Source: Mytilus edulis
Taxonomy: Eukaryota
Length of the DNA: 64,000 nucleotides
Reading direction: 5' to 3'
Assembly (NCBI RefSeq): GCF_963676685.1
Contig: NC_092352.1
Location: 83,514,001 to 83,578,000 of the forward strand
Within the stretch, counting starts at the first letter, position 1; each line of letters opens with the position of its first letter. Shown in pieces: positions 41,995 to 64,000 of this stretch. A program made the position numbers and the translations under genes. The notes under the pieces were generated by a model. The model was not told where the DNA came from and ran no database searches. It worked only from the letters and a program-made list of their open reading frames with translations.

Positions 41995-42883
41995 ATGGCG
42001 TTATCAAAATCCATCATTAAAGCTCAGGATATAATGTCATGTAACGTTTGTGAATCCGAGACAAAATTGAAATGGAAGTGTATCGATTGTGACTTGCTAA
42101 TGTGTAATAAATGCCGCGAGAAAATTCATCCAAAGTTTAAAAATGCAGATGACCACACCATTTTAGACATAAAGGAAGTTGGACGTAGTTTGGGTAATAT
42201 CAATCTTAACTTTACAGCCATCAAATGCAAAGTACACAAAGTCCAAACATGCTGCCTTTTCTGTAGTACTTGTGACCATCTTGTTTGTCCAATATGCATC
42301 GCAAAAATTCACACTGGTCATAGTTTCTCTGAAATAAAGGAAGTATATAACATGGAACTAGACAAACTAAAGAATAGAAAACTGAAAATAGAAATAGAAG
42401 AAAGGGGACTTGCTAACGACGAAAGAAAGCTTAATCAGTTAAAAATATCAGAGTTTTGTAAAGATGAGAGAGTTTTAAAAGACATTCAAGCTCAGAAAGA
42501 AGAATTAATAGGACATGCAAATGAATTTTCGAAAAAAGTACATCAACAAATGAAGTCCAATGAAGATTCAATATCTGTGGAACAGAATAAGACCGTGAAT
42601 TCTAGAGAAAAATTGCGGGAACAGTTTTTGAAAGTTGATGAGCTTATTGGGTCCATAGATCCTGTAGAGTTTTTTGAAAATATTGATAAAGTAAAGATAT
42701 CGTTAGACACTGCCGTACAACCAATCGACTTAAGCCAAATTTGTACACTACAATTCATGCCAAAAAAGTTATCGCCATCAATTTTCGGTTCCTTGACTGA
42801 TGTCGTTTGCGGCGATATTATAGGAATGAAAGTAAATAAGCAGTTCGTCACTGGGTTAACGTCTTGCCACTATTTATCTGTTT
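41995..42883 (+). pseudogene. RING-less TRIM-like copy 3, 5' part (B-boxes and coiled coil), interrupted by the 8-kb transposon
   Basis: Colinear with copies 1 and 2 up to CHYLSV. The ORF then runs into the TIR and stops at 42939. Confidence 0.9.
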
Positions 42884-42958
42884 CACGGGTAGTAAGGTCG
42901 TCATATCGAGGAGTGTTTAGTACAGTGATTTTGTCATAGTTTGGATAAGTTTGACATG
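42884..42958 (+). repeat. Left TIR (75 bp)
   Basis: CACGGGTAGTAAGGTCGTCATATCGAGG..TTTGACATG is the reverse complement of 50863-50937 except at position 3. Confidence 0.96.
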
Positions 42959-44256
42959 GTTAATTTATGTCGCTTCCTTTAACTATTGCCTCAGTTCTAT
43001 TCACACGAGCAGATAAAAAGCAAATAAGATGTTTGAATCTGTATTGGAGGTCAAACGATCTATATTGGAATCTTTGTTTCACGAAATTAATGCAGAATAA
43101 GCGAGATATCGGAATTGCTATGGTTTGGTTAAGCGATTGACATGGTTCGGTTAAGAGTCTAGAAATTTGTCATGGTTTTGGTCAAGATTGTCATGGTTTA
43201 GATCGAAATAAATATATATGTGTTTCACTTTAATACTGAAAATTTGATTGGTAGCGCCTGTTATTGAACAAAGTTACACTATATATTAACTGCCTGAGAG
43301 AAAAAAAAGCCTGTTTAACAAGATTTAGTGGGTGTAATCGTCAAAGAGTAAATTAAACATGTCATGTTACTTTTCCTTAGTTTTCTACTATATAAATTAA
43401 AATTCACTGCTCTTTTAAACTAGCTTTCGATATAATTTTACAAAAAAGAGACAAAGCGTTGCTTCTGTTTCACATATAATCTTTTCTCTATATGTCCATG
43501 CTTGACTCTGCCGGGGATATCATGAGCGGCATCTCTTGTTAGATAACATAAGACTTCTACTCAAAAGTGGCAGCCAGTCAAAATGTAATTCTTGTTTTTC
43601 ATTTTCTATTCTAGAAAACTCTACATTTTGTTGGTTTTTCTTTATTTTATATTTCGAACCAATTAATGATGAATAAAAGGAGATGTGGGGTTATATGTCC
43701 ATGATACAGTAACCCAACTACAAAACTAACCAAAAGATATTAAGAGTACACCATAAGTCCTCAACCATATAAGAAACCGAATAGTTACGCGTGACATGGA
43801 CAACAGTTTTAAAACTTATTGGTTGAAGAACTATAATAGGTGAAATTACAATAAAAAGTACTTTCAAAGTTCGAATTCAAAATATGAAAGATCACAACTC
43901 CAATTTTGGATTTAAGCCGATATAATGTTCAAGTTTATCAATTATTATTACGAATCAATAAAAATCTTTGTTTGTAATATCATATTTATAAATGCATTGT
44001 GTATAGAATCATTAAATTATTTCAAATATTTTACTTTAAAAGTAATATAGTTTCTATACTATCTGAAAAAAAACTCCTGCTTTCTAGTTTTAAGTATGAG
44101 GTGGTTAATTATAAAATGTGATTGAAAAAGGATTGAAATTCAAAGAAACACGTGTTACATTGTCTGCTACATGTACATTTAAACCGTGTACGACCTTAAT
44201 TTTGACCTGTCTAGACCAAAAATTATCGTTTGTAATAGGACAGAACGTATTAGAAG

Positions 44257-45597
44257 ATGGACGGAGATGAAACAGATGGTAAGTTTGTTGATATATATCA
44301 CAAGTACACTTCATTTGAACTTCTTAGAACATTCAATGATATTTTTATGCTATCTATATTTGCCGTATATCATTTTTCCTTATTTGATTTCCAATTTACT
44401 AGGTAATATCAAATGTAAGATGACGTGGGAAATACATAAATGAGACAGCAAACTAACAACACAAACATGAATTCTTCAACAATAGGATGAATTGAATAGG
44501 CCAAACTCTATATCTGCCCGTTTCTATAAAACGGGTGAATAGATTGAACAGAGACACCCAGAGATCTGAAACCATCAAACTATTTTCAGTATAGCGTAAC
44601 AATAAGGTATGACATAGGACAACTTGTCGCGTCACTTCGGAGTTCACTAGATAAGTTTTTAAAATTAAATGTGTAAAACCGTTCTTTAGCGCTAATGAAT
44701 GCCTGTTCAGTGTCTGTGTTGAAAACGTATATTTCCATTGTGTAACCAAATATGTTAAGCAAAAATACAACGCAGCCAAATTCATAATTGTTTTTTTTTT
44801 GTTATTTATTAACACGATACGGCTCCAAATTTTACACAAATGCATTGAATTGGACTCATACATATTTTTCAGAGGCAATTGCATCTATTGCTCCTTTAGA
44901 CGGGTCATTTGAAGCTATTGGTGATACTGATCTAATTGAAGAAACAGTGGGTTCACTTAATAAAAATGATGGTAAATTAGATGAAAACAATAATGAAGCT
45001 CAACAGGGTTTACCAAAAATAACTAAAGTCCAGTGCGACATCTGTTCTAAAATTGTTCAAAGAAGATGTCTAACACGCCACATGAGAACACACGGGGATC
45101 AACTGATTTGTTCCCATTGTCCAGCGAAATTCTCAGATAGATGGGCTTTGAACGAACATGAAGCACGACATTCAAACCCTTTAATGTGTGATGTTTGCGG
45201 CAAAAAATATACTTCAAGAATCGGCCTAAGTCGCCATTTAAGGGACCATGCCAGTACACGCCCAATAGAGTGTGGTATTTGCCATCAACGGTTTAACGAT
45301 AACGCTCACTTTGAAGGTCATCGCAACAGTAAACATTTAAACTACAAACCGTTTAAATGTACCGTATGCAGCAAGGCTTTCGCTTATAGACAATCAATGG
45401 CAAGACATGTCAAAGAATGTCAAGGGAATAAGTCATACAACTGTATGGAATGTAATGCTGTGTTTAACAGCAAGCGTTCACTAGACCAGCACCATAGTGG
45501 GAAACACGGGCAGAAAGTGCATACATGTATGTGTGGAAAGTCCTTCCGTTGGGTTCGATCATTCACCAGACATAGTAAAATATGTAAAACAAAATAA
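44257..45597 (+). CDS. Transposon-borne C2H2 zinc-finger protein (7 fingers); exons 44257-44278 and 44873-45597
   Basis: ATG GAC GGA GAT GAA ACA GAT G|GTAAGT splices in frame to TTTTTCAG|AG GCA ATT. Acidic N terminus, then fingers CDIC..H..H, CSHC, CDVC, CGIC, CTVC(H..C), CMEC, CMC(H..C). AATAAA at ~45607 and ~45619. Confidence 0.88.
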
Positions 45598-45678
45598 TTT
45601 ATCAAATAATAAAAATTTAATAAATTCAAAAGTTGTTTTTTGATTCATGTCTAGCATTCATATACATGATATACATTT

Positions 45679-48600
45679 CTAAATATCATAACATGCTCTT
45701 TTATGAGGAAGGATTTTTTCTTCATCTTTCCTATGGTACTGACGAATTCCTTGAGCACCATGTGCAAATCCATCATATGTGCTCACGATTGCACTTTTCC
45801 GTTTAGCAGTGGATCTTCGGGGTTGGTCAAACATTGCATGGCTTCTGAAATAAATAAACGTAATCATATTTTATTAGCTCTTTTAAATTCAAGTTTATAG
45901 TACGACTGCGGCACTAAAAGATTAAAAAATTTAGAAACAAATATTGAAAAATAGGATCCTCCCACTGATGTTTTATATAATTCTATTCAATATAATTACA
46001 GTGTTAAGTATCTATCGTTATTTATTGCTAGACATAATTCAAAGATGCACGTACAATATATGTAGATAAAGACACCATGTTCCGCCTGATGCATATCACA
46101 AGATGTGAATTATCACTTTATTTTACTCACAATGACCGACATAATGGCTGCCCCCTATGGTACAGGATCCCCTCGCCCTTCAGGAGTGAGCGAGCCCAAT
46201 TCATGACGGAGTTTGTGATGCTACTGACTATTTCATGAGTTATGCTTTCTTGGTATCATTAACATCTTAAAGATTGTTAATATTATGAATATAAGAACAG
46301 GATTTTCTTATTCATTTTTTTTCATTAAGAGAAGGGATGTTACTTAAACTCATATTCATGTTGAATGACTGCTGGACATAACACATTTTGTTTGTAATTT
46401 AAATTTTTCAGTCAGAATGACACACCATAATAGTTATTGATATAAAGTTTCATTAAACTTAGTACCTAAAACCACCGACTGATTTCTTGGCCACATCTTC
46501 TTCTTGTACAGTTGCTGCTTGTGTTTTACAACTGGAAGTAGTATCATACTTTTCTGTCTGTTGATTGTAGACTGGACGTTTAGTAGTTGTGTTCAGATAG
46601 AAACCCCTATTTAATAAAAGTAACACTAATAAGTATATAAGAAGTCAAAGGTTTTTAGCATGCTACTGGTTATGATAAGAACCATGGTATGTTGTAGTTT
46701 CGGGTCCTGTTAGACGACTGTTCCCTATTGTTGCTGGCGGATATTTTTATGTTTTGAGCTGTTACATCATTGTTATAGGTAAACGGGAAGGGTTAAACGC
46801 TAATGGATGTTTAACCCCGTCGTATTTTTTATGTGCCAGTCCAATGTCATTGGTTGTGTTGGTTCGCGCCCGACATATACATTATTTTCGTAATTGCTTT
46901 GCTATAAATTAGACTTAATTTTCTCAACTAAAGTTTTTCATATTCATCATGTCAGGGCCGTCTATAGCTGACTATATGGTATGTGTGTTTTCATTGTTGA
47001 AGGCTGCACAGTTGTCTATATTAGTTAACATCTATTTCAATTAAACTTTTGTGGATAGACAGTATTCTCATTTGAAACAATACCTCATCTTTTTATTTAT
47101 ATTTCAATTGTGTTTATTTTTAAGTGTCACTTCCGCCAGTTCTAAAATTTCAATTGCTTCTAAATTTCACATGTTTCGTAATTTCTTTATAAACAAAAAA
47201 TTAAAACATTTACCTGTGTGGATTCATCCTTGTTGTTAATATTTCACATGCTACACTCATGGCTTTAGGGATTTCAGATGTTTTTAGCACACCAGCACCT
47301 CTTGGGTCCAAGTCTCTAAACGAGGAGAAGAATGTTTCATTGTCCAAACTTCCAATAGATCTGACATTGTATGTTCCAGTTTTTGAAAGGCGATAAAGCT
47401 GAATAAGCCTTTCACAGCTAGTGATTAGTCCAGTAAACAAAATAACAGGTATGTCACTAACATGACTTCCAGGTGGCGGAAACTGTCTAAGACATGTTTG
47501 GCATGAGTCAAGAAGAAATTCTCTCAAATTTAAAAGCTTTTGTACACGTCCATTCGCTGATAAACCTTTTTCATCCATCAAATGCCTCTACCTGAACATG
47601 AATATTGTATGTCTTTAGTTGTTCGCGTAAGAATTCAAGCATCTGTCTTACAGTGTCCGCTTTCAAGTGCTTCGGACTCAACCCATATGCAACCGGAAAA
47701 ACATAAGGCTTGTCGATCGCATAGGTCCTATCCAAGTCACTCAACATGAATACCATAACATCACTTGGTCTATCAAAGCAAAGGGTGAAATGCTGATTGA
47801 TCAAACACTTTACATCATCTATGCAGCTCTTTATTTCAGAAAGGTCTATCGCGTTAAACGTTCGTCTTTGTTCTGTACTTGGAGAGTGTGAACCATAAAC
47901 TCCATCAGTCTGAGCAGAATCGTGTCTACATTGAATGGCTTTCAAAGATTTGAACTCTCCTAAATATTTCACGTTTTGTGTCAGAAAAGTATCTATAAGT
48001 GCTTTTAGTTCTTTGGTTTTCGGCTTTTTTTTGGTAGGTCTTCTGTTGTGCGTTCCATACAGAAATTCTGCCTCTGTAACTATTGCAGTATACAAATCTT
48101 CATCAAATTTCACAAGAAAAGCAGTCGTTGATTCTTCAGACCACGAAACAAAAATGGATTCCGGAATATGATACCCGTAGCTTTCTTTTGAAGCCCCCAT
48201 TTGAGTTATCAGTTGTAATACATAGTAATTTGGAATTGAGTAAGACACATTAGTTTTCCAGTCGGATTTGTATGGACACTTTATTTCGAAGAGAAATCTT
48301 TTCATCTGACCTTCATCTCCTTCACCATCTGGACTGGCAACAAGAAAAGGTTTGTCTTCTCTCCATTTAACGTAGCAGCCGACTTCTTTAAACTTTATTT
48401 TCGGGAAGAGTGATGGTAATATCTTCCCACAAATAGTTGCAACTCCGTGCTTTTCATTTTCAATACCATGTAACATCTGAGGTGTTGGAGACTGTACTCC
48501 GTCCTTGTCTTTGTTAAGAATCACAGAGTCATAATGTGCTTGCTGCTCCTTCAGTGTGCGTAAACCAAGTGCTGTATGCATTGTACTTGCAGTTACTTTA

Positions 48601-49860
48601 GCTTGCTTCCGTAGTTCAAACCATTCGTCAGACCGTTGTTGAAGAAACTTGGTACATTGACTGTTGGTTTCTTTGTAAAATTCTGATCGCAGACAAAAAT
48701 AATTTGGTTGGTTATTCATGTCAGCCTCTTTACCAATCACAAAAGATGTTTCTGAACCATTCATATACGAAAAGTATTTGCAAATTCTATCGTTAACCCT
48801 AAGCAAGCTATCAATACAATCTTTTGTCATTCCTATATTTGTTTTCATGGCACTTATAGCGTATGCGTATTTAGATTTTTTCCAATCGCCTGGGCTCTGT
48901 TTTTCCGACTTTTCCATTATTTTTTTCAGATTTGCTTCTTTTCCAACGAGATACTGCCGCAAAACTTTTAATCTTTGACAAAGAATTTCAAAAGTTTCAA
49001 AAAGTCCTTTCTTTATGTGAGTTACCTGTTCATTGTTTCAGGTCAACACAAATTTTCCAGCTTTTTGTCGTGACGTCGTCTGTTGTGGAAATAAAAGATA
49101 TCAATTCCTTTATAATTCCAGGTTGAATTGTTTTTGGCAGAACTGTTAGCATGCAAGACAAGCTTGCTTTGCTAGGAACAGCAAAATTGATTTTTGAATT
49201 TTCAGGATCAAATTTTTCTCGTATTCCAATATTTTCCATTACCAAGTTTTGATTTCCAAGTCCCCTCATGAAATTTAAAAATTTTGTATGGAATAATCGA
49301 AAACCGATTTGCCAAAAACTTTTACTTCTATCGCTATAACGCATAGCTGAGATTTTAGATTCCGAAAACCAACGGACAACATCTAAAAATAACAAAAAGG
49401 CTATACTCTGCATGGGAAATCTGTCTTGTAGTGTAAGATGTATGAAAAGCCAAAAGTTATCTCTTTGACTGTCATTGTTAGGGATTTTATTCAAGACTGT
49501 GGCTAGGTTTATCTCGTGTGGCTGTTTGCATTTTCCCTGAAATTCATTATCTTTATTCGAATCATCCTCCATTCTTAAATCGTCATTTTCGGATTTAGAA
49601 AACTTTTCAATGGTCTTTTCCGAGCAAACTTCAGTAATTTGGATATTTTCATCTCCTGGGCTTATCCATATTTTCTTGTTTTCACTTTTCAAAATTTCTG
49701 GAATGATATGATAATGTTTGGATACATATCCAGTCACACCATCTTTAGTTGTTTTTCGTTTTACTGAAAGAAATCGATCTCCATGATTTAGTATGGTGTG
49801 TCCTAGAATTGACAATATGTCTAAAGTGTAAAGCTCACAATATTGGCAGCAGAATTCCAT
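45679..49860 (-). pseudogene. P-element/THAP9-like DDE transposase with embedded YqaJ (lambda-exonuclease-like) domain; exons ~49860-47214 (two frame breaks), 46606-46466, 45844-45679
   Basis: N-terminal CQYC..H..H finger. P-like motifs MRYS..KSFW, FAVPS..L..IQPGII, KICVD (D 49042-44), VMVFML..PVAYG, VEAFDG (D 47577-79), DNETFFSSFR (E 47336-38). YqaJ motifs QRSDEW..R..VTAS, HGIENE, ASPDG, FEIKCP, YVLQLITQM. Phase-consistent GT-AG introns give NPHR|GFYLNTT and GGFR|SHAMFD. Frameshifts at ~49040 and ~47575. Confidence 0.8.
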
Positions 49861-50862
49861 CCTGAAATTTAAAAGAAGCTATCTTAGAATCATGATTTTG
49901 TATCATTTGTTATTTGTTTGAAACTAGGTCCCACTTAATATCAGTACTTTATTTGTGTCTTTAGTGTTTCTGTTACTTGATTTTCTTGTCTAAACCCGAT
50001 CTGTTGAGTTTACATGTGTGGCATGGTTAAGTCGAAGAAGAGGTTGGGGAGCCTACAAACATGTTGAACTCCGCATTTTGTATATACTGTCTCAAGTTCA
50101 GTGTTTGTAATGCCGTGAATATCGTATGTAACTGTGTATCATATTTTGCTATTTATTTTGGACAGAAATTAGGCTGATAGTTTTCTTATTGGAATTCCTA
50201 TACATTGAATTTTGCCGCAGTCTTTTATATCTAAGAAATAAGGTTTTGCTCATTGTTGAATGTTGAAGGCCTCTTGATGACAAATAGCTGCTAACATCTA
50301 CGTCATTTGATCTCAGGTGGATAGTTATCTCATTGTCAATCTTATTGCATCTACTTATAACATATTATTACATTGTATGTGCGTTTTTATATCCTTTTGT
50401 GTTTCAAATGGAACGATTTTTGTTAATTTTGATAGTAACTCTTCATTATACACGACAAGAATTACATAACTGAACCATGTCTAACATGAACTTAACCATG
50501 ACACGAGTGAACCAAACCATGACACAGATATTTCAGTAATTTTGAATTTATTGTAAAAGTAGGTATTTTTCAGAATATTTGACCGCAGTGTTATATAACG
50601 AAGATGTATGTGATGTAACAGACTGTAAGAAAATAACTTTTTTTATGCACAATAAACCAATTAGCAAGTTTTAAATTTTGACATACGCAAGCTTTGTTCT
50701 GTGTTAAATCATTAACCATATGATACAATTTGTGATGTACTAACATATTTACTTGATACAAAGGTACTTACCAGCTTGAATTAATGGTCAGAAGTTCCGT
50801 TTACAAAATATCCCATTGTTTACATTTTTGCATTGATTGTCATCAAAAAGACTTAACACCGT

Positions 50863-50937
50863 CATGTCAAACTTATCCAAACTATGACAAAATCACTGTA
50901 CTAAACACTCCTCGATATGACGACCTTACTACCCTTG
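50863..50937 (-). repeat. Right TIR (75 bp)
   Basis: Reverse complement CAAGGGTAGTAAGGTCG..TTTGACATG. Confidence 0.96.
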
Positions 50938-50942
50938 TGTTT

Positions 50943-51745
50943 GTTTTGATGGATCCTGTTGGATAGGTGATGGAACTACCAAAGTTTTACAAAAAATAAA
51001 TATTGATGGAAATAACCCTTCTACATTATATACCATAAAGACGGGAATCAGAGGAATATCAATTACTCCTGATGGCGATATTCTTCTCGCTAATGCAACA
51101 CCGAGGGTTAAACGTATCAAAAGAACCAGTGGAAAAGTCAAGGAGTCAAAGTACAGCGTGGACGCGTTGTCGATAATATCAGTCCATGTTACAAGAGACC
51201 ATAAAATTATTGTAGGAGCAAAGAGTCCTGGTGAAGTTATACCGGTCACAGGAAGAAGAGTGATGATTGTAATGGATAAAGACGGGGTCCATGAAGCTGT
51301 GTATGAGTATGATAAAAACAAACAGAGATTACTGACATTTCCAAACAGCATAACCAGCACTAACGACGGAAGTATCTTTATCGCAGATTTTACTCAGTCT
51401 GATAAAAGTAACAGCAGAATATTGGCACTGAATAAAGATGGAAGTACAATAGATACATACACTGGGCATCCAGATTTAAACGATAAAAATCAGCCATTTG
51501 AACCGGTTATTATAGCAAGTACACTTTTAGATAACATTATCATAGCAGATGTAAATTGCCATGCATTTCATATTCTTGACAATTCTTGTAACCTGATAAC
51601 CTACTATAAAACTAGAGACATAGGTATAGAGTATCCATACTGTGTTGCTTTTACTAGTGCCACAACATTTTACCTTGGATGTTCACAACCAGTGAACAGT
51701 GTCACAAATGCTAAACTTTATGAGATTGAATATTCAGGTTTCTGA
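50943..51745 (+). pseudogene. RING-less TRIM-like copy 3, 3' part (beta-propeller)
   Basis: Open frame (C)FDGSCWIGDGTTKVLQK...NAKLYEIEYSGF*. Joined to 41995-42883 it gives a 563-aa protein colinear with the paralogs. Confidence 0.9.
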
Positions 51746-54960: not shown

Positions 54961-56569
54961 TGGGAATGATTAATGTCAATGCTAATGAAACAGCATATCA
55001 TTTACCCTAAACTTACCACAAATCATTCCTTAGAAAAAATAAGTAAAATCACAAAAATACTGAACCTGAGGAAAATTTAATCGGAAAATCCTAATAACTT
55101 GTCAAAATCAAATGACGAAACATCAAACAAATAGACAACTTGTATCTCTATAGAAGTCGCTCCTCACTATCCTACTACCTGTCGATACATTTATTTTTGG
55201 CATTGCACAAGTCATGTCCTCTCTGTCTGTTCATGACGTTAAAATACTAAATCCCTGGGATGTGTTTTACTAGATCTTAGTCTCTGATGCATGATTTTTT
55301 TTATTATTAATTGTTTTTGGCCTTTAACTAGCTGTCAGTAACTGTGAGTACTCTCAAATCGTATTTTCTTGTTAATTCGATCTGTTGATACTGTTTATAA
55401 TGCTTTTTTGTTATTTTATATTAATATGGATCTTGTCTATATACCAGCTTTTATTACTTGGAATATATTCTAAGTTTCACTTCTTCTTACTACATTTATA
55501 TAAACTTCAAGATTTACCTGTATTTTTTTAAAACCGTTTTTTTTTTCTAAAGTGAATATTTTTGAAGGGTTAAATATTTCGTAATGGTGACTTGCCATGG
55601 CTTTGTTTGGACTTGTTTGTTTGCTTTTTGGCCTTGAATGTTTGTCCCTAATATTTTATTAACTGTGCATTTGCATTCAGATACCGCAGATCAAATTTAT
55701 TCCTTTATAGTGTATTAATGTACGTTTTTTGATTGAGTTAAGCCTGCCAATTGATATTTTACCCTGTGTGTTTCTATGTTGTGATGTTATGCTATTGTTT
55801 CAGAAAAGGGGAGAAGGTTTGGATCCATTAAAACGTTTAATCCTGCTGCAAATGTTTGCACCTGTCCTAAGTCAGGAATTTGATGTACAGTAGTTGTCGT
55901 TTGTTTATATAATTTATACGTGTTTCTCGTTTCTCAGTTTTTTATTTTATATAGATTAGACCGTTGGTTTTCCCGTTTGAATGGTTTTACACTAGTAATT
56001 GTGGGGCCCTTTATAGCTTGTTGTTCAGTGTGAGCCAATGCTCCGTGTTGAAGGCCGTACTTTGACCTATAATGGTTTACTTTTTTTTAAATTGTTTTTT
56101 TTTGGATGGAGAGTTGTCTCATTGGCACTCACACCACATCTTCCTATATCTAACAACTGTCATATTTCTGACTTGGTACATGCATTTTCAAATGTAGAAA
56201 ATAGTGGATTGAACATGGTTTTATAGCACTAAACCTCTCACTTGTACAAGTCTCATCAAAGTACAATGATGCATGAACAAAATGTCACAAATAGGGGTAC
56301 AAAAACAACACAGACCCCTACAAAAACTGGGGATGACTTCAGGTGCTATATAAGGGAAGAAGACCTGACCCAAGTACAAAGTTTATTAAAGTTTCAAAGT
56401 CAATGAGTCATGATGAGGGGCAGGGTCATATAATCTCCATGAAAATGACACTAGCAAATTGTTATACAACTGTAAACCAATAAAGGTAACACTGTAACAG
56501 TAGTATACTGCTGTTCAAAAGTTATTAATCGATTGACAGAAAACAAACAATATCACTGACTTGCAATTA

Positions 56570-59500
56570 GTTGATAAATCACATTCTGTCTGCCTGTCTC
56601 AAGTCAGAAACCAGTAAATCAGGGGTTGTCATTAGTTGATAAACCACATTCTGTCTGTGCCTGTCTCAAGTCAGAAACCAGTAAATCAGGGGTTGTCATT
56701 AGTTGATAAACCACATTCTGTCTGTGCCTGTCTCAAGTCAGAAACCAGTAAATCAGGGGTTGTCATTAGTTGATAAACCACATTCTGTCTGTGCCTGTCT
56801 CAAGTCAGAAACCAGTAAATCAGGGGTTGTCATTAGTTGATAAACCACATTCTGTCTGTGCCTGTCTCAAGTCAGAAACCAGTAAATCAGGGGTTGTCAT
56901 TAGTTGATAAACCACATTCTGTCTGTGCCTGTCTCAAGTCAGAAACAAGTAAATCAGGGGTTGTCATTAGTTGATAAACCACATTCTGTCTGTGCCTGTC
57001 TCAAGTCAGAAACCAGTAAATCAGGGGTTGTCATTAGTTGATAAACCACATTCTGTCTGTGCCTGTCTCAAGTCAGAAACCAGTAAATCAGGGGTTGTCA
57101 TTAGTTGATAAACCACATTCTGTCTGTGCCTGTCTCAAGTCAGAAACCAGTTAATCAGGGGTTGTCATTAGTTGATAAACCACATTCTGTCTGTGCCTGT
57201 CTCAAGTCAGAAACCAGTTAATCAGGGGTTGTCATTAGTTGATAAACCACATTCTGTCTGTGCCTGTCTCAAGTCAGAAACCAGTAAATCAGGGGTTGTC
57301 ATTAGTTGATAAACCACATTCTGTCTGTGCCTGTCTCAAGTCAGAAACCAGTAAATCAGGGGTTGTCATTAGTTGATAAACCACATTCTGTCTGTGCCTG
57401 TCTCAAGTCAGAAACCAGTAAATCAGGGGTTGTCATTAGTTGATAAACCACATTCTGTCTGTGCCTGTCTCAAGTCAGAAACCAGTAAATCAGGGGTTGT
57501 CATTAGTTGATAAACCACATTCTGTCTGTGCCTGTCTCAAGTCAGAAACCAGTAAATCAGGGGTTGTCATTAGTTGATAAACCACATTCTGTCTGTGCCT
57601 GTCTCAAGTCAGAAACCAGTAAATCAGGGGTTGTCATTAGTTGATAAACCACATTCTGTCTGTGCCTGTCTCAAGTCAGAAACCAGTAAATCAGGGGTTG
57701 TCATTAGTTGATAAACCACATTCTGTCCGTGCCTGTCTCAAGTCAGAAACCAGTAAATCAGGGGTTGTCATTAGTTGATAAACCACATTCTGTCCGTGCC
57801 TGTCTCAAGTCAGAAACCAGTAAATCAGGGGTTGTCATTAGTTGATAAACCACATTCTGTCCGTGCCTGTCTCAAGTCAGAAACCAGTAAATCAGGGGTT
57901 GTCATTAGTTGATAAACCACATTCTGTCTGTGCCTGTCTCAAGTCAGAAACCAGTAAATCAGGGGTTGTCATTAGTTGATAAACCACATTCTGTCCGTGC
58001 CTGTCTCAAGTCAGAAACCAGTAAATCAGGGGTTGTCATTAGTTGATAAACCACATTCTGTCTGTGCCTGTCTCAAGTCAGAAACCAGTAAATCAGGGGT
58101 TGTCATTAGTTGATAAACCACATTCTGTCTGTGCCTGTCTCAAGTCAGAAACCAGTAAATCAGGGGTTGTCATTAGTTGATAAACCACATTCTGTCTGTG
58201 CCTGTCTCAAGTCAGAAACCAGTAAATCAGGGGTTGTCATTAGTTGATAAACCACATTCTGTCTGTGCCTGTCTCAAGTCAGAAACCAGTAAATCAGGGG
58301 TTGTCATTAGTTGATAAACCACATTCTGTCTGTGCCTGTCTCAAGTCAGAAACCAGTTAATCAGTGGTTGTCATTAGTTGATAAACCACATTCTGTCTGT
58401 GCCTGTCTCAAGTCAGAAACCAGTTAATCAGGGGTTGTCATTAGTTGATAAACACCACATTCTGTCTGTGCCTGTCTCAAGTCAGAAACCAGTTAATCAG
58501 GGGTTGTCATTAGTTGATAAACACCACATTCTGTCTGTGCCTGTCTCAAGTCAGAAACCAGTTAATCAGGGGTTGTCATTAGTTGATAAACCACATTCTG
58601 TCTGTGCCTGTCTCAAGTCAGAAACCAGTAAATCAGGGGTTGTCATTAGTTGATAAACCACATTCTGTCTGTGCCTGTCTCAAGTCAGAAACCAGTAAAT
58701 CAGGGGTTGTCATTAGTTGATAAACCACATTCTGTCTGTGCCTGTCTCAAGTCAGAAACCAGTAAATCAGGGGTTGTCATTAGTTGATAAACCACATTCT
58801 GTCTGTGCCTGTCTCAAGTCAGAAACCAGTAAATCAGGGGTTGTCATTAGTTGATAAACCACATTCTGTCTGTGCCTGTCTCAAGTCAGAAACCAGTAAA
58901 TCAGGGGTTGTCATTAGTTGATAAACCACATTCTGTCTGTGCCTGTCTCAAGTCAGAAACCAGTAAATCAGGGGTTGTCATTAGTTGATAAACCACATTC
59001 TGTCTGTGCCTGTCTCAAGTCAGAAACCAGTAAATCAGGGGTTGTCATTAGTTGATAAACCACATTCTGTCTGTGCCTGTCTCAAGTCAGAAACCAGTAA
59101 ATCAGGGGTTGTCATTAGTTGATAAACCACATTCTGTCTGTGCCTGTCTCAAGTCAGAAACCAGTAAATCAGGGGTTGTCATTAGTTGATAAACCACATT
59201 CTGTCTGTGCCTGTCTCAAGTCAGAAACCAGTAAATCAGGGGTTGTCATTAGTTGATAAACCACATTCTGTCTGTGCCTGTCTCAAGTCAGAAACCAGTA
59301 AATCAGGGGTTGTCATTAGTTGATAAACCACATTCTGTCTGTGCCTGTCTCAAGTCAGAAACCAGTAAATCAGGGGTTGTCATTAGTTGATAAACCACAT
59401 TCTGTCTGTGCCTGTCTCAAGTCAGAAACCAGTTAATCAGGAGTTGTCATTAGTTGATAAACCACATTCTGTCTGTGCCTGTCTCAAGTCAGAAACCAGT

Positions 59501-62500
59501 TAATCAGGGGTTGTCATTAGTTGATAAACACCACATTCTGTCTGTGCCTGTCTCAAGTCAGAAACCAGTTAATCAGGGGTTGTCATTAGTTGATAAACCA
59601 CATTCTGTCTGTGCCTGTCTCAAGTCAGAAACCAGTAAATCAGGGGTTGTCATTAGTTGATAAACCACATTCTGTCTGTGCCTGTCTCAAGTCAGAAACC
59701 AGTAAATCAGGGGTTGTCATTAGTTGATAAACCACATTCTGTCTGTGCCTGTCTCAAGTCAGAAACCAGTAAATCAGGGGTTGTCATTAGTTGATAAACC
59801 ACATTCTGTCTGTGCCTGTCTCAAGTCAGAAACCAGTAAATCAGGGGTTGTCATTAGTTGATAAACCACATTCTGTCTGTGCCTGTCTCAAGTCAGAAAC
59901 CAGTAATTCAGGGGTTGTCATTAGTTGATAAACCACATTCTCTCTGTGCCTGTCTCAAGTCAGAAACCAGTAAATCAGGGGTTGTCATTAGTTGATAAAC
60001 CACATTCTCTCTGTGCCTGTCTCAAGTCAGAAACCAGTAAATCAGGGGTTGTCATTAGTTGATAAACCACATTCTGTCTGTGCCTGTCTCAAGTCAGAAA
60101 CCAGTAAATCAGGGGTTGTCATTAGTTGATAAACCACATTCTGTCTGTGCCTGTCTCAAGTCAGAAACCAGTAAATCAGGGGTTGTCATTAGTTGATAAA
60201 CCACATTCTGTCTGTGCCTGTCTCAAGTCAGAAACCAGTAAATCAGGGGTTGTCATTAGTTGATAAACCACATTCTGTCCGTGCCTGTCTCAAGTCAGAA
60301 ACCAGTAAATCAGGGGTTGTCATTAGTTGATAAACCACATTCTGTCCGTGCCTGTCTCAAGTCAGAAACCAGTAAATCAGGGGTTGTCATTAGTTGATAA
60401 ACCACATTCTGTCTGTGCCTGTCTCAAGTCAGAAACCAGTAAATCAGGGGTTGTCATTAGTTGATAAACCACATTCTGTCTGTGCCTGTCTCAAGTCAGA
60501 AACCAGTAAATCAGGGGTTGTCATTAGTTGATAAACCACATTCTGTCTGTGCCTGTCTCAAGTCAGAAACCAGTAAATCAGGGGTTGTCATTAGTTGATA
60601 AACCACATTCTGTCTGTGCCTGTCTCAAGTCAGAAACCAGTAAATCAGGGGTTGTCATTAGTTGATAAACCACATTCTGTCTGTGCCTGTCTCAAGTCAG
60701 AAACCAGTTAATCAGGGGTTGTCATTAGTTGATAAACCACATTCTGTCTGTGCCTGTCTCAAGTCAGAAACCAGTTAATCAGGGGTTGTCATTAGTTGAT
60801 AAACCACATTCTGTCTGTGCCTGTCTCAAGTCAGAAACCAGTTAATCAGGGGTTGTCATTAGTTGATAAACCACATTCTGTCTGTGCCTGTCTCAAGTCA
60901 GAAACCAGTTAATCAGGGGTTGTCATTAGTTGATAAACACCACATTCTGTCTGTGCCTGTCTCAAGTCAGAAACCAGTAAATCAGGGGTTGTCATTAGTT
61001 GATAAACCACATTCTGTCTGTGCCTGTCTCAAGTCAGAAACCAGTAAATCAGGGTTGTCATTAGTTGATAAACCACATTCTGTCTGTGCCTGTCTCAAGT
61101 CAGAAACCAGTAAATCAGGGGTTGTCATTAGTTGATAAACCACATTCTGTCTGTGCCTGTCTCAAGTCAGAAACCAGTAATTCAGGGGTTGTCATTAGTT
61201 GATAAACCACATTCTCTCTGTGCCTGTCTCAAGTCAGAAACCAGTAAATCAGGGGTTGTCATTAGTTGATAAACCACATTCTCTCTGTGCCTGTCTCAAG
61301 TCAGAAACCAGTAAATCAGGGGTTGTCATTAGTTGATAAACCACATTCTGTCTGTGCCTGTCTCAAGTCAGAAACCAGTAAATCAGGGGTTGTCATTAGT
61401 TGATAAACCACATTCTGTCTGTGCCTGTCTCAAGTCAGAAACCAGTAAATCAGGGGTTGTCATTAGTTGATAAACCACATTCTGTCTGTGCCTGTCTCAA
61501 GTCAGAAACCAGTAAATCAGGGGTTGTCATTAGTTGATAAACCACATTCTGTCTGTGCCTGTCTCAAGTCAGAAACCAGTAAATCAGGGGTTGTCATTAG
61601 CTGATAAACCACATTCTGTCTGTGCCTGTCTCAAGTCAGAAACCAGTTAATCAGGGGTTGTCATTAGTTGATAAACCACATTCTGTCTGTGCCTGTCTCA
61701 AGTCAGAAACCAGTTAATCAGGGGTTGTCATTAGTTGATAAACCACATTCTGTCTGTGCCTGTCTCAAGACAGAAACCAGTTAATCAGGGGTTGTCATTA
61801 GTTGATAAACCACATTCTGTCTGTGCCTGTCTCAAGTCAGAAACCAGTTAATCAGGGGTTGTCATTAGTTGATAAACCACATTCTGTCTGTGCCTGTCTC
61901 AAGTCAGAAACCAGTAAATCAGGGGTTGTCATTAGTTGATAAACCACATTCTGTCTGTGCCTGTCTCAAGTCAGAAACCAGTAAATCAGAGGTTGTCAAT
62001 AGTTGATAAACCACATTCTGTCTGTGCCTGTCTCAAGTCAGAAACCAGTAAATCAGGGGTTGTCATTAGTTGATAAACCACATTCTGTCTGTGCCTGTCT
62101 CAAGTCAGAAACCAGTAAATCAGGGGTTGTCATTAGTTGATAAACCACATTCTGTCTGTGCCTGTCTCAAGTCAGAAACCAGTAAATCAGGGGTTGTCAT
62201 TAGTTGATAAACCACATTCTGTCTGTGCCTGTCTCAAGTCAGAAACCAGTAAATCAGGGGTTGTCATTAGTTGATAAACCACATTCTGTCTGTGCCTGTC
62301 TCAAGTCAGAAACCAGTAAATCAGGGGTTGTCATTAGTTGATAAACCACATTCTGTCTGTGCCTGTCTCAAGTCAGAAACCAGTAAATCAGGGGTTGTCA
62401 TTAGTTGATAAACCACATTCTGTCTGTGCCTGTCTCAAGTCAGAAACCAGTAAATCAGGGTTGTCACTAGTTGATAAACCACATTCTGTCTGTGCCTGTC

Positions 62501-63885
62501 TCAAGTCAGAAACCAGTAAATCAGGGGTTGTCACTAGTTGATAAACCACATTCTGTCTGTGCCTGTCTCAAGTCAGAAACCAGTAAATCAGGGGTTGTCA
62601 TTAGTTGATAAACCACATTCTGTCTGTGCCTGTCTCAAGTCAGAAACCAGTAAATCAGGGGTTGTCACTAGTTGATAAACCACATTCTGTCTGTGCCTGT
62701 CTCAAGTCAGAAACCAGTAAATCAGGGGTTGTCATTAGTTGATAAACCACATTCTGTCTGTGCCTGTCTCAAGTCAGAAACCAGTAAATCAGGGGTTGTC
62801 ATTAGTTGATAAACCACATTCTGTCTGTGCCTGTCTCAAGTCAGAAACCAGTAAATCAGGGGTTGTCATTAGTTGATAAACCACATTCTGTCTGTGCCTG
62901 TCTCAAGTCAGAAACCAGTAAATCAGGGGTTGTCATTAGTTCATAAACCACATTCTGTCTGTGCCTGTCTCAAGTCAGAAACCAGTAAATCAGGGGTTGT
63001 CATTAGTTGATAAACCACATTCTGTCTGTGCCTGTCTCAAGTCAGAAACCAGTAAATCAGGGGTTGTCATTAGTTGATAAACCACATTCTGTCTGTGCCT
63101 GTCTCAAGTCAGAAACCAGTAAATCAGGGGTTGTCATTAGTTGATAAACCACATTCTGTCTGTGCCTGTCTCAAGTCAGAAACCAGTAAATCAGGGGTTG
63201 TCATTAGTTGATAAACCACATTCTGTCTGTGCCTGTCTCAAGTCAGAAACCAGTAAATCAGGGGTTGTCATTAGTTGATAAACCACATTCTGTCTGTGCC
63301 TGTCTCAAGTCAGAAACCAGTAAATCAGGGGTTGTCATTAGTTGATAAACCACATTCTGTCTGTGCCTGTCTCAAGTCAGAAACCAGTAAATCAGGGGTT
63401 GTCATTAGTTGATAAACCACATTCTCTCTGTGCCTGTCTCAAGTCAGAAACCAGTAAATCAGGGGTTGTCATTAGTTGATAAACCACATTCTGTCTGTGC
63501 CTGTCTCAAGTCAGAAACCAGTAAATCAGGGATTGTCATTAGTTGATAAACCACATTCTGTCTGTGCCTGTCTCAAGTCAGAAACCAGTAAATCAGGGGT
63601 TGTCATTAGTTGATAAACCACATTCTGTCTGTGCCTGTCTCAAGTCAGAAACCAGTAAATCAGGGGTTGTCATTAGTTGATAAACCACATTCTGTCTGTG
63701 CCTGTCTCAAGTCAGAAACCAGTAAATCAGGGGTTGTCATTAGTTGATAAACCACATTCTGTCTGTGCCTGTCTCAAGTCAGAAACCAGTAAATCAGGGG
63801 TTGTCATTAGTTGATAAACCACATTCTGTCTGTGCCTGTCTCAAGTCAGAAACCAGTAAATCAGGGGTTGTCATTAGTTGATAAA
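56570..63885 (+). repeat. Tandem satellite, 67-bp monomer, about 109 copies
   Basis: Monomer CCACATTCTGTCTGTGCCTGTCTCAAGTCAGAAACCAGTAAATCAGGGGTTGTCATTAGTTGATAAA (e.g. starts at 56711 and 56778). Very homogeneous. Confidence 0.98.
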
Positions 63886-64000
63886 AAGTAAAATCACAAA
63901 AATACTGAACTTAGAGGAAGATCAATTGGGAAAGTCCATAATCACATGGCAAAATCAAATAACAAAACGCATCAAAAACGAATGGACAAGAACTGTCATA
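63886..64000. repeat. Start of an interspersed repeat, same family as ~37792-38082 and ~55015-55140/56152-56300
   Basis: Shared AAAGTAAAATCACAAAAATACTGAAC..AATGGACAA..ACTGTCATA. Confidence 0.65.

What the first reader, a model, noticed from the sequence alone, without database searches (positions are those of the whole stretch)
47336..49044. Complete YqaJ/lambda-exonuclease domain inserted inside the RNase H-like catalytic fold of the transposase
Seen in sequence: putative D1 (KICVD, 49042-44) and D2 (VEAFDG, 47577-79) are about 490 codons apart. Between them are a helical segment and a PD-(D/E)xK nuclease with intact motifs (QRSDEW..R..VTAS, HGIENE, ASPDG, FEIKCP, Q..Q; ~48640-48060). This runs in the same ORF straight into the P-like VMVFML..PVAYG..V..FDG strands. 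Established knowledge: in Drosophila P transposase D230 and D303 are only ~73 residues apart, and the insertion domain lies after the second Asp; YqaJ/lambda exonucleases are 5'-3' resection nucleases of phage and large-virus recombination systems. Inference: one polypeptide couples cut-and-paste catalysis to end resection, perhaps trimming excised ends (which could explain the atypical TSD) or steering donor-site repair toward homologous copy-back.
Basis: partly seen in the sequence, partly recalled or inferred. Interest (0 to 1): 0.88.

Follow-up and report, generated by a model that had tools for sequence, protein, structure and literature searches.

The report
Transposase with built-in lambda-exonuclease domain
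A mussel jumping gene encodes a P-element-like cutting enzyme with a second, phage-type DNA nuclease spliced into the middle of its catalytic fold. The window holds a dead, internally deleted copy of it, and the same design is conserved across molluscs, annelids and amphioxus.

Summary

**What the window holds**
- The window copy (element 42884-50937, 75-bp TIRs, 5-bp TSD TGTTT) is a frame-broken deletion derivative.
- A 99%-identical copy elsewhere on the same chromosome carries an intact 1360-aa ORF.

**Architecture of the intact protein**
- D273 (KICVD) lies on strand beta1.
- About 465 aa then follow: a three-helix arm plus a YqaJ/lambda-exonuclease domain with D572, E586 and K588.
- Only after that come beta2-beta4 with D822 (FDG), a DxxH motif (1147-1150) and E1319 (ETFF).

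**Evidence**
- An AlphaFold2 model (pLDDT 85.9) aligns to Drosophila P element transposase at Z 27.9 across the insert, and to lambda exonuclease at Z 15.7.
- A separate split-chain prediction docks residues 225-300 between beta2 and beta4 (score 0.67, best control 0.01).
- Both active sites are nearly invariant in about 160 homologues, and no YqaJ-less relative was found.

**How new it is**
- Lambda-exo-like nucleases are already known in eukaryotic DNA transposons: a separate ORF in ISL2EU, and a domain downstream of the transposase domain in KolobokE.
- I did not find this family described: nuclease placed inside the fold, P-like core, 5-bp TSD, CAC termini.

**Not shown**
- What the nuclease does is inferred only.

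The scan noted this element before (s1-838800).

The parts
42884..50937 (-). Whole transposon copy (8054 bp), an internally deleted non-autonomous derivative of a 9483-bp element
   Evidence: 75-nt inverted repeat, 99% complementary. Colinear at 99.2-99.9% with the intact copy L021 307-9789, apart from two deletions.
42884..42958 (.). Left terminal inverted repeat, terminus CACGGGTAG
50863..50937 (.). Right terminal inverted repeat
42879..42883 (.). 5-bp target site duplication TGTTT, left copy; the right copy is at 50938-50942
   Evidence: The intact copy has ATTAA. Two other subfamilies have ACCTC and AAATA.
49030..49860 (-). N-terminal fragment of the transposase ORF (276 aa). It ends with strand beta1, KICVD; the catalytic D1 codon is 49044-49042 (D273 of the intact protein).
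   Evidence: D273 is invariant in 41 of 41 aligned sequences and in 85 of 86 homologues. The strand is model residues 69-77. It contacts 761-767 and 816-818.
49033..49036 (-). Junction of a 178-bp internal deletion with 4-bp microhomology. It removes intact residues of about 277-336: the conserved GD.DLWG.E motif and the start of the helical arm.
   Evidence: residue arithmetic
47571..48962 (-). Middle ORF fragment (463 aa): rest of the helical arm, the YqaJ nuclease domain, a linker, then RNase H strands beta2-beta4
48192..48626 (-). YqaJ/lambda-exonuclease PD-(D/E)xK domain. The SPDG Asp codon is 48329-48327. In EIK, the Glu codon is 48287-48285 and the Lys codon is 48281-48279.
   Evidence: Pfam E 5.9e-12. 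Profile alignment to lambda exonuclease and LHK-Exo. VIA Z 15.7, 187 residues aligned, rmsd 3.1. D/E/K conserved in 155-157 of 159 homologues.
47577..47762 (-). RNase H strands beta2 (VMVFML), beta3 (FPVAYG), helix alpha1 and beta4 (VQVEAF), ending in the catalytic D2 codon 47579-47577 (D822)
   Evidence: secondary structure. Weak colinear hhalign match to canonical P-like transposases, E 1.5e-4 to 1.8e-3. PF21787 profile positions 64-132 matched in homologue P0029. D822 conserved in 107 of 110 homologues.
47575..47577 (-). Junction of a 1247-bp internal deletion with 3-bp microhomology. It removes intact residues of about 824-1239, including the DxxH motif.
47210..47581 (-). C-terminal ORF fragment (123 aa) with the catalytic Glu in LDNETFF (GAA 47338-47336, E1319) and the P-like E.FF..R..G motif
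   Evidence: E1319 conserved in 63 of 64 homologues. Colinear hhalign to the P-like C-terminus, E 0.023. Residues 1318-1320 lie in the interface with the beta1 fragment.

Best explanation
The locus is a dead, internally deleted copy of a recently active cut-and-paste DNA transposon in a Mytilus-like mussel genome.

The intact transposase (1360 aa) has a P-element-type RNase H-like DDE core with catalytic residues D273, D822 and E1319 and a DxxH motif at 1147-1150. The loop between strand beta1 (carrying D1) and strand beta2 has been expanded by about 465 residues. The insert is a long three-helix arm that carries a complete YqaJ/lambda-exonuclease-type PD-(D/E)xK nuclease. Its catalytic residues are D572, E586 and K588, and R478 aligns with the Arg of lambda exonuclease that binds the 5'-phosphate.

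Both active sites are under strong conservation across phyla, so the protein is a two-nuclease transposase. That much is shown, and the confidence given here is for this architectural part.

The following is inferred. The DDE site makes the 3'-OH ends and performs strand transfer with a 5-bp stagger. The tethered nuclease acts on 5'-phosphorylated DNA ends created during excision. My odds are:
- about 45%: it processes the non-transferred 5' strand at the transposon ends or flanks. This would resemble Tn7, where TnsA cuts the 5' strand alongside TnsB, or it would leave 3' overhangs like those at cleaved P element ends.
- about 25%: it resects the donor gap so that repair proceeds by homologous copying.
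- the remainder: other roles.
For: **Intact copy and element ends**
- The intact copy has a 1360-aa ORF.
- The window copy equals it minus two out-of-frame deletions.
- TIRs and 5-bp TSDs were found in four copies from three subfamilies.

**Nuclease domain**
- Pfam YqaJ match at E 5.9e-12 (window ORF) and 4.1e-11 (intact protein).
- Profile alignment to lambda exonuclease pairs R478, D572, E586 and K588 with the W-H-K-L-R, SPDG and E-L-K motifs.

**Conservation**
- D273 and K275 are invariant and D822, D1147, H1150 and E1319 nearly so. The alternative Asp, D732, is unconserved.

**Predicted structure**
- AlphaFold2 model of residues 200-1360: pLDDT 85.9, pTM 0.77. Strand order is beta1 (model 69-77), helical arm, YqaJ, then beta2, beta3, alpha1, beta4.
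- Foldseek hits are lambda exonuclease and P element transposase.
- VIA-align: 6p5a_A Z 27.9, rmsd 4.0, 349 residues aligned, model 20-1159 against chain 177-569. Lambda exonuclease Z 15.7. HzTransib 11.7, RAG1 10.6, Hermes 9.1.

**Split-chain test**
- Residues 225-300 dock onto 745-1360 with score 0.67 against a best control of 0.01.
- The mark was reached by 51 of 78 solved complexes and 2 of 108 mismatched pairs.
- The three runs share at least 71% of contacts, and the partner pLDDT is at least 53.
- Strand 268-275 pairs antiparallel with 761-767 and lies beside 816-818. Residues 822, 1147 and 1318-1320 are in the interface.

**Distribution**
- The family has 961 hits at E up to 1e-3.
- It occurs in Mytilus, Mercenaria, Batillaria, Owenia and Branchiostoma.
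- All relatives found with the C-terminal region alone still carry the SPDG and E.KC motifs.
Against: - Sequence-level similarity to P/THAP9 is weak. Pfam PF21787 passes its cut-off in only 1 of 6 full-length members, and only over its second half.
- hhalign of the beta1 region alone is not significant (E 0.19), although it picks the D1 motif.
- The structures are predictions. I could not read coordinates, so the distance between the two active sites is unknown.
- There is no THAP domain, and the TSD is 5 bp rather than the 7-8 bp of P.
- No Kolobok or MuDR structure exists for comparison.
- No biochemical data exist for the nuclease.
- Expression is not shown: 8 RNA-seq reads at 95-99% identity in one run and none in another.
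Confidence: 0.85

Rival explanations
1. The YqaJ domain is simply N-terminal to a contiguous RNase H core. The true D1 would be the Asp in NAIDLSEI (D732), about 30 residues before VMVFML, and KICVD would be irrelevant.
For: The spacing of D732 to VMVFML resembles the beta1-beta2 spacing in canonical P-like transposases. This was my own first guess on reading the sequence.
Against: D732 and its surroundings are unconserved, while D273 and K275 are invariant. In the AlphaFold2 model that region is a helix, not a sheet strand. The P transposase alignment starts at model residue 20, upstream of the insert. The 225-300 fragment docks as the central strand between beta2 and beta4.
Confidence: 0.03
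2. The YqaJ segment is a secondary nested insertion, a gene-model chimera or an assembly artefact peculiar to this copy.
For: The genome holds at least 150 other YqaJ-domain loci, most of them in small ORFs, so the domain is mobile in this genome.
Against: The same colinear architecture occurs in single uninterrupted ORFs of 1100-1500 aa at many loci of this genome. It also occurs in homologues from bivalves, a gastropod, an annelid and amphioxus. No relative lacking it was found.
Confidence: 0.02
3. The core is not P-like. It belongs with Transib/RAG1-like transposases or another superfamily of the C/DxxH group (Kolobok, MuDR, Dada, hAT). On this view the P match only reflects which structures have been solved.
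For: 5-bp TSDs and CAC termini, including CACAGTG in one subfamily, are the hallmarks of Transib/RAG. HzTransib and RAG1 do match, at Z 10-12. No Kolobok, MuDR or Dada structure is available for comparison.
Against: The P transposase match is far stronger: Z 27.9 against 11.7, with 349 of about 393 residues aligned. PF21787 hits a family member above its cut-off. The E.FF..R..G and D..HLL..R motifs are colinear with canonical P-like proteins of the same genome. The KolobokE core motifs printed in PMC9587614 supplement 3 differ (ADGxW, ADGDSS, CxNHLLRN, E.FNS). Kolobok makes TTAA TSDs.
Confidence: 0.1
4. A rival on function. The nuclease does not act within the transpososome. It acts after excision, resecting the double-strand gap left at the donor site. 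Repair then copies the element back from the sister chromatid or homologue, giving net replicative gain.
For: The lambda-exo-type residues, including the aligned 5'-phosphate-binding Arg, are conserved. The window copy is an internal-deletion derivative with 3-4 bp microhomologies at both junctions. That is the pattern expected from interrupted gap repair. From established knowledge, P element donor gaps are repaired by homology-directed synthesis.
Against: Host cells already resect double-strand breaks. A nuclease held on a rigid helical arm inside the catalytic fold suggests action close to the DDE site. Nothing here distinguishes the two roles.
Confidence: 0.25

Closest known systems
Drosophila P element transposase / THAP9 family (PDB 6P5A, 6PE2)
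   Same: RNase H-like DDE core with a large region between D2 and E. VIA Z 27.9 with 349 residues aligned. Motif correspondence: FD230EMKV to VD273LKKI; YVQLAIVRG..KQPVFF to VMVFML..FPVAYG; IVSD303 to EAFD822; D..HLIK..RN to D..HLLTN.R; VE531HFFG..R.RGG to NE1319TFFS.FR...RGAG.
   Different: About 465 residues (helical arm plus YqaJ nuclease) lie between beta1 and beta2, where P has about 20. A further roughly 290 residues lie between D2 and DxxH. No THAP domain was detected. The TSD is 5 bp, not 7-8 bp. The TIRs are 75-480 bp and start with CAC or CAA. Only marginal Pfam recognition.
KolobokE DNA transposons (Kojima and Bao 2022, PMC9587614)
   Same: A eukaryotic DDE transposase of the C/DxxH group combined with a PD-(D/E)xK lambda-exonuclease-like nuclease. 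Several Kolobok lineages also carry an insertion (a CCHC zinc finger) just after D1, which is the same loop.
   Different: [quoted passage not shown] The TSD is TTAA and the termini are RR/YY. There are zinc fingers after D1 and between C/DxxH and E, and the core motifs differ. None of these features is seen here.
ISL2EU (PHIS superfamily) transposons
   Same: Eukaryotic cut-and-paste elements that carry a YqaJ exonuclease-domain protein of unknown role (PMC4482050, PMC4122938).
   Different: There the YqaJ domain is in a separate second ORF beside a PIF/Harbinger-type, THAP-bearing transposase, and the target site is A|AT|T. Here it is inside the transposase fold.
Tn7 TnsA/TnsB
   Same: A PD-(D/E)xK nuclease cooperates with a DDE transposase. 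From established knowledge TnsA cuts the 5' strands. TnsA is listed as a PD-(D/E)XK transposase in PMC3424549.
   Different: Tn7 is bacterial and uses two separate proteins. TnsA is a restriction-endonuclease-like member, not a YqaJ/lambda-exo member. The resemblance is functional only and is not tested here.
Lambda exonuclease / LHK-Exo / mimivirus R354
   Same: Fold and catalytic motifs match: Z 15.7, 15.5 and 13.3; profile E 1e-4 to 3e-4.
   Different: Those are free-standing proteins. Lambda exonuclease is a toroidal trimer that resects processively. Here the domain is an internal module of a transposase, and its oligomeric state is unknown.

Membership tests
YqaJ / lambda exonuclease (PF09588, PD-(D/E)xK) | Pfam model matched above the gathering score over nearly its full length | tested here: met
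   46.5 bits against a cut-off of 22, profile positions 1-146 of 150. Also matched in 5 of 5 full-length homologues tested.
YqaJ / lambda exonuclease (PF09588, PD-(D/E)xK) | Catalytic Asp, Glu and Lys (lambda D119, E129, K131) present | tested here: met
   D572, E586 and K588 align to SPDG and E.K of lambda exonuclease and LHK-Exo. Conserved in 155, 157 and 156 of 159 homologues.
YqaJ / lambda exonuclease (PF09588, PD-(D/E)xK) | N-terminal W..R motif, including the Arg that binds the 5'-phosphate in lambda exonuclease (the role of R28 is from my own knowledge) | tested here: met
   W474 and R478 align to W-H-K-L-R of lambda exonuclease. R478 is conserved in 141 of 143 homologues.
YqaJ / lambda exonuclease (PF09588, PD-(D/E)xK) | Fold | tested here: met
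   3sm4_B Z 15.7, rmsd 3.1, 187 of 228 residues aligned. 3sz4 Z 15.5.
YqaJ / lambda exonuclease (PF09588, PD-(D/E)xK) | 5' to 3' exonuclease activity and oligomeric ring | not testable with these tools
   Needs purified protein.
P element / THAP9 transposase superfamily | RNase H-like DDE core superposable on P transposase | tested here: met
   6p5a_A Z 27.9, 349 residues aligned, model 20-1159 against chain 177-569. The next superfamily scores Z 11.7.
P element / THAP9 transposase superfamily | Pfam TNP-like RNase H models (PF21787 and partners) matched | tested here: inconclusive
   Only P0029 passes, at 25.8 bits against 24.6, and only over profile positions 64-132. P0008 is sub-threshold. 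No hit to the other P models.
P element / THAP9 transposase superfamily | C/DxxH signature between D2 and E | tested here: met
   D1147 and H1150 are conserved in 68 of 68 homologues. The signature is defined in PMC9587614.
P element / THAP9 transposase superfamily | N-terminal THAP DNA-binding domain | tested here: not met
   No THAP hit at E up to 1 in 6 full-length members. The N-terminus has a CxxC..HxxxxH pattern instead.
P element / THAP9 transposase superfamily | 7-8 bp target site duplication | tested here: not met
   5-bp TSDs: TGTTT, ATTAA, ACCTC, AAATA.
P element / THAP9 transposase superfamily | GTP-binding insertion domain between D2 and E | tested here: inconclusive
   The structural alignment covers most of chain 177-569, so that region is probably matched. 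No Pfam hit was found and GTP-contact residues were not examined.
KolobokE | TTAA TSD and 5'-RR..YY-3' termini | tested here: not met
   5-bp non-TTAA TSDs and CAC/CAA termini against the definition.
KolobokE | [quoted passage not shown] | tested here: not met
   The nuclease lies between D1 and D2. No conserved Cys/His cluster appears in the consensus or in the invariant columns.
Transib / RAG1-like | 5-bp TSD and CAC termini | tested here: met
Transib / RAG1-like | Core most similar to Transib/RAG1 | tested here: not met
   HzTransib Z 11.7 and RAG1 Z 10.6 against P transposase Z 27.9.
ISL2EU | YqaJ protein as a separate ORF beside a PIF/Harbinger-type transposase | tested here: not met
   Single 1360-aa ORF with a P-like core.

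The most novel reading that the evidence does not exclude
This family would be a previously unrecognised, superfamily-level lineage of eukaryotic cut-and-paste transposons. It is P-related in fold but has Transib/RAG-like CAC termini and 5-bp TSDs. Its transposase would be a single-chain two-nuclease machine. The lambda-exo-type domain, held on a helical arm that grows out of the beta1-beta2 loop of the RNase H fold, would carry out the 5'-strand step of excision that other DDE transposases solve by hairpinning or staggered hydrolysis.
Probability: 0.3. Interest if true: 0.8.

Novelty: new variant of a known kind. Interest (0 to 1): 0.62.

Why it matters
How DDE transposases deal with the second (5') DNA strand is the main mechanistic variable among cut-and-paste superfamilies. 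The known solutions are hairpins in hAT, Transib and RAG, staggered hydrolysis in P, and a separate TnsA subunit in Tn7.

A widespread animal family has a conserved, apparently active 5'-end nuclease built into the catalytic fold of a P-like transposase. This offers a testable fourth solution. Alternatively it is a built-in way to bias donor-gap repair.

The finding also has a practical use. Hundreds of proteins now labelled only 'YqaJ viral recombinase domain-containing' or 'hypothetical' in mollusc, annelid and amphioxus genomes are transposases. This matters for gene and repeat annotation.

The beta1-beta2 loop also emerges as a site in this fold that tolerates very large insertions.

Tried and rejected
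1. **My own alternative D1.** I proposed D1 at NAIDLSEI (D732), with YqaJ merely N-terminal to the core. Conservation, the AlphaFold2 topology, the VIA range and the split-chain contacts all reject it.

2. **Profile comparison of the beta1 region.** hhalign of the beta1 segment alone against canonical P-like transposases of the same genome was not significant (E 0.19 to 0.44), although the local alignment picked the D1 motif. The beta2-beta4 part scored E 1.5e-4 to 1.8e-3 and the C-terminal part E 0.023. These are weak but colinear.

3. **PDB sequence search.** A profile search with the family found only lambda-exo-type chains, not P transposase. The link to P needed structure.

4. **Protein atlas.** It gave only 'hypothetical protein, YqaJ'.

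5. **YqaJ-less relatives.** A search with the C-terminal 606 residues found none. Three hits without a Pfam tag still carry SPDG and E.KC.

6. **Expression.**
   - Two runs of guessed RNA type hold contigs, but these may be DNA.
   - Of two true RNA-seq runs, one gave 8 reads at 95-99% identity and the other none.
   - This is no evidence either way.

7. **Literature.** Searches for YqaJ with transposase, DDE, 'P element' or transposon found ISL2EU and KolobokE only, and nothing on this architecture. Repbase Reports and subscription journals are not in the library, so prior description cannot be excluded.

8. **One ambiguous TSD.** A fifth copy on C10, with terminus CACAGTG, lies in an AT-rich flank and its TSD is ambiguous (AATAAT). 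It is left unresolved.


Full report
**Observation**

On the minus strand the window has three consecutive ORF fragments: 49860..49030 (276 aa), 48962..47571 (463 aa) and 47581..47210 (123 aa).
- KICVD, with GAC at 49044-49042.
- VEAFDG, with GAT at 47579-47577.
- LDNETFF, with GAA at 47338-47336.

The middle fragment matches Pfam YqaJ (PF09588) at E 5.9e-12 over profile positions 1-146 of 150. It continues without a stop into VMVFML..FPVAYG..VEAFDG.

**The window copy is a deletion derivative**

The element is bounded by 75-nt inverted repeats at 42884-42958 and 50863-50937 and by a 5-bp duplication, TGTTT.

A six-frame search of the same genome found a 99%-identical copy within a much longer open frame. 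After fetching it I found an uninterrupted 1360-aa ORF inside a 9483-bp element with the same TIRs and the TSD ATTAA.

A DNA comparison shows the window copy is colinear at 99.2-99.9% apart from two internal deletions:
- 178 bp, with its junction at about 49033-49036 and 4-bp microhomology.
- 1247 bp, with its junction at about 47575-47577 and 3-bp microhomology.

Neither length is a multiple of three, which explains the two frame breaks. The deletions remove intact residues of about 277-336 and about 824-1239. The window copy is therefore dead. All further analysis used the intact protein, in which D1 is D273, D2 is D822 and E is E1319.

**The architecture is a family trait**

The genome has many diverged paralogues (30-35% identity). 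Their single open frames of 1100-1500 aa cover the query colinearly.

An exhaustive profile-free search found 961 homologues at E up to 1e-3. Full-length ones are 1200-1700 aa, with the query region at about residues 300-800. Named members come from Mytilus edulis, Mercenaria, Batillaria (gastropod), Owenia (annelid) and Branchiostoma. All are annotated only as 'YqaJ viral recombinase domain-containing' or 'hypothetical'.

In a 41-sequence alignment D273, K275, S570, D572, E586 and K588 are invariant, and D822, D1147 and H1150 nearly so. Conservation over about 160 representatives:

| Residue | Conserved |
|---|---|
| D273 | 85/86 |
| K275 | 87/87 |
| R478 | 141/143 |
| D572 | 155/159 |
| E586 | 157/159 |
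| K588 | 156/159 |
| D822 | 107/110 |
| D1147, H1150 | 68/68 |
| E1319 | 63/64 |

A search with only the C-terminal 606 residues found no relative without the nuclease motifs. A nested or chimeric origin for this copy is therefore excluded.

**Where D1 is**

I first suspected that the real D1 was the Asp in NAIDLSEI (D732), about 30 residues before VMVFML. That would put YqaJ simply upstream of a contiguous core. That Asp and its surroundings are not conserved.

Canonical P/THAP9-like transposases of the same genome and the P element transposase sequence in 6P5A give the reference pattern:
- FD230EMKV on beta1.
- About 20 residues of loop.
- YVQLAIVRG and KQPVFF (beta2, beta3).
- IVSD303.
- D..HLIK..RN.
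- VE531HFFG..R.RGG.

The family consensus reads:
- L..DGKKI..G.....GD.DLWG.E
- then about 465 residues
- then A.EVLVF.LSD...PVAY....FDGQW...D..HLLTN.R....SL..E.FFS.

**Predicted structure**

An AlphaFold2 model of residues 200-1360, built with a 62-sequence alignment, has mean pLDDT 85.9 and pTM 0.77. Model numbering is intact numbering minus 199. The elements in order are:
- A strand at 69-77 carrying D74 (D273).
- Three long helices at 100-228.
- An alpha/beta domain at 240-463.
- Strands 562-570 and 582-590, helix 596-611, and strand 617-622, followed directly by D623 (D822).

This is the beta1 / beta2-beta3-alpha1-beta4 order of an RNase H fold, with the insert in the beta1-beta2 loop.

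Foldseek against the PDB gave lambda exonuclease, LHK-Exo and Drosophila P element transposase as the top hits. VIA-align gave:

| Chain | Z | Detail |
|---|---|---|
| 6p5a_A (P transposase) | 27.9 | rmsd 4.0, 349 aligned, model 20-1159 against chain 177-569 |
| Lambda exonuclease | 15.7 | model 261-469 |
| LHK-Exo | 15.5 | |
| HzTransib | 11.7 | |
| RAG1 | 10.6 | |
| Hermes | 9.1 | |

The P transposase match starts upstream of beta1 and runs across the insert to the C-terminus.

**Independent split test**

I gave residues 745-1360 and residues 225-300 to the complex predictor as separate chains. It uses a different model and no alignment.
- The score was 0.67, against a best control of 0.01.
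- The mark was reached by 51 of 78 solved complexes and 2 of 108 mismatched pairs.
- The three runs share at least 71% of their contacts, and the partner pLDDT is at least 53.

The lowest-error contacts pair 275, 273, 272 and 270 with 762, 764, 765 and 767 (antiparallel), and 268-270 with 816-818. So the KICVD strand sits between beta2 and beta4, as beta1 must. Residues 822, 1147 and 1318-1320 are in the same interface.

**The nuclease**

The profile alignment to lambda exonuclease pairs W474..R478 with W-H-K-L-R, SPD572G with CSPDG, and E586-I-K588 with E-L-K. From established knowledge these lambda residues are R28 (5'-phosphate binding) and D119, E129 and K131 (catalysis). Their near-invariance argues for a working enzyme that recognises 5'-phosphorylated ends.

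**Relation to what is known**

- PD-(D/E)xK nucleases in transposition have a precedent in TnsA.
- ISL2EU elements carry a YqaJ protein as a separate ORF of unknown role.
[quoted passage not shown] They also state that several Kolobok lineages have a CCHC finger just after D1.

This family is not KolobokE:
- Its TSDs are 5 bp and not TTAA (TGTTT, ATTAA, ACCTC, AAATA).
- Its termini are CAC or CAA rather than RR.
- It has no conserved zinc fingers.
- Its core motifs differ from the KolobokE sequences printed in that paper's supplement.
- The nuclease lies between D1 and D2.

Nor is it a typical P element. There is no THAP hit, the TSD is 5 bp, and there is a second expansion of about 290 residues between D2 and DxxH.

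The 5-bp TSD and CAC termini recall Transib/RAG, but the fold match to P is much stronger. I found no description of this architecture in the searchable literature. That library lacks Repbase Reports.

**Mechanism**

Shown:
- Two conserved active sites in one chain.
- The nuclease carried on a helical arm out of the beta1-beta2 loop.
- 5-bp staggered integration.
- Recent mobility: copies at 99% identity with different TSDs.

Inferred:
- The DDE site generates the 3'-OH ends and performs strand transfer.
- The nuclease acts on the 5'-phosphate ends produced during excision.
- I favour processing of the non-transferred strand at or near the transposon ends (about 45%) over post-excision resection of the donor gap (about 25%).

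The microhomology-flanked internal deletions of the window copy fit interrupted gap repair, as with deleted P elements. They do not discriminate between these roles.

**Expression**

This was not settled. Of two true RNA-seq runs, one yielded 8 reads at 95-99% identity and the other none.

**Verdict**

This is a real and well-supported architecture. The window holds a dead copy, and a 99%-identical copy with an uninterrupted 1360-aa ORF lies on the same chromosome. It is a new variant within known kinds: a P-like DDE transposase combined with a transposon-borne lambda-exo-type nuclease. It is of good interest to transposon biologists, mainly because it makes the question of second-strand processing testable in a new system.

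Noticed in passing
window 44788-45597 (+), inside the element; also L021 2269-3021: An intact multi-finger C2H2 zinc-finger ORF lies tail-to-tail with the transposase gene.
   Followed up: partly
window 43168-43204 and 50488-50524: Subterminal inverted repeat (37 nt, 78% complementary) built on a repeated TGTCATGGTTT motif, about 285-410 bp inside each end. These are candidate transposase-binding sites.
   Followed up: no
L048 with L049 (G000:C10:55.58-55.60 Mb): A diverged subfamily copy with a 1511-aa open frame has 55-bp perfect TIRs starting CACAGTG. That is identical to the V(D)J RSS heptamer consensus and close to Transib termini. Its TSD is ambiguous in an AT-rich flank.
   Followed up: partly
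L052 with L053 (G000:C6:51.26-51.28 Mb): Another subfamily copy with a 1443-aa open frame has very long TIRs (483 bp, 99.4% identical) and the TSD ACCTC. It looks recently inserted.
   Followed up: partly
whole genome G000: At least 150 loci match Pfam YqaJ, most of them in small ORFs of 200-600 aa, plus one group of 974-aa ORFs. The domain is strongly associated with repeats in this genome, and other carrier element types remain to be sorted.
   Followed up: no
window 51158-51745 (+): Just outside the right TIR there is a 195-aa ORF whose repeats look NHL/beta-propeller-like (FIADF..., IIIADV...). It may be an exon of a host gene.
   Followed up: no
window 56001-64000: GC content rises from about 0.31 to 0.40-0.42 over the last 8 kb of the window.
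   Followed up: no
intact protein residues 824-1146 (deleted in the window copy): A second family-specific expansion lies between D2 and the DxxH motif. It has a conserved FDGQW..L..RD..G.PLT.LQLQKD.W segment, an 80-residue disordered stretch (model 683-762) and an all-helical domain. No function is assigned.
   Followed up: no
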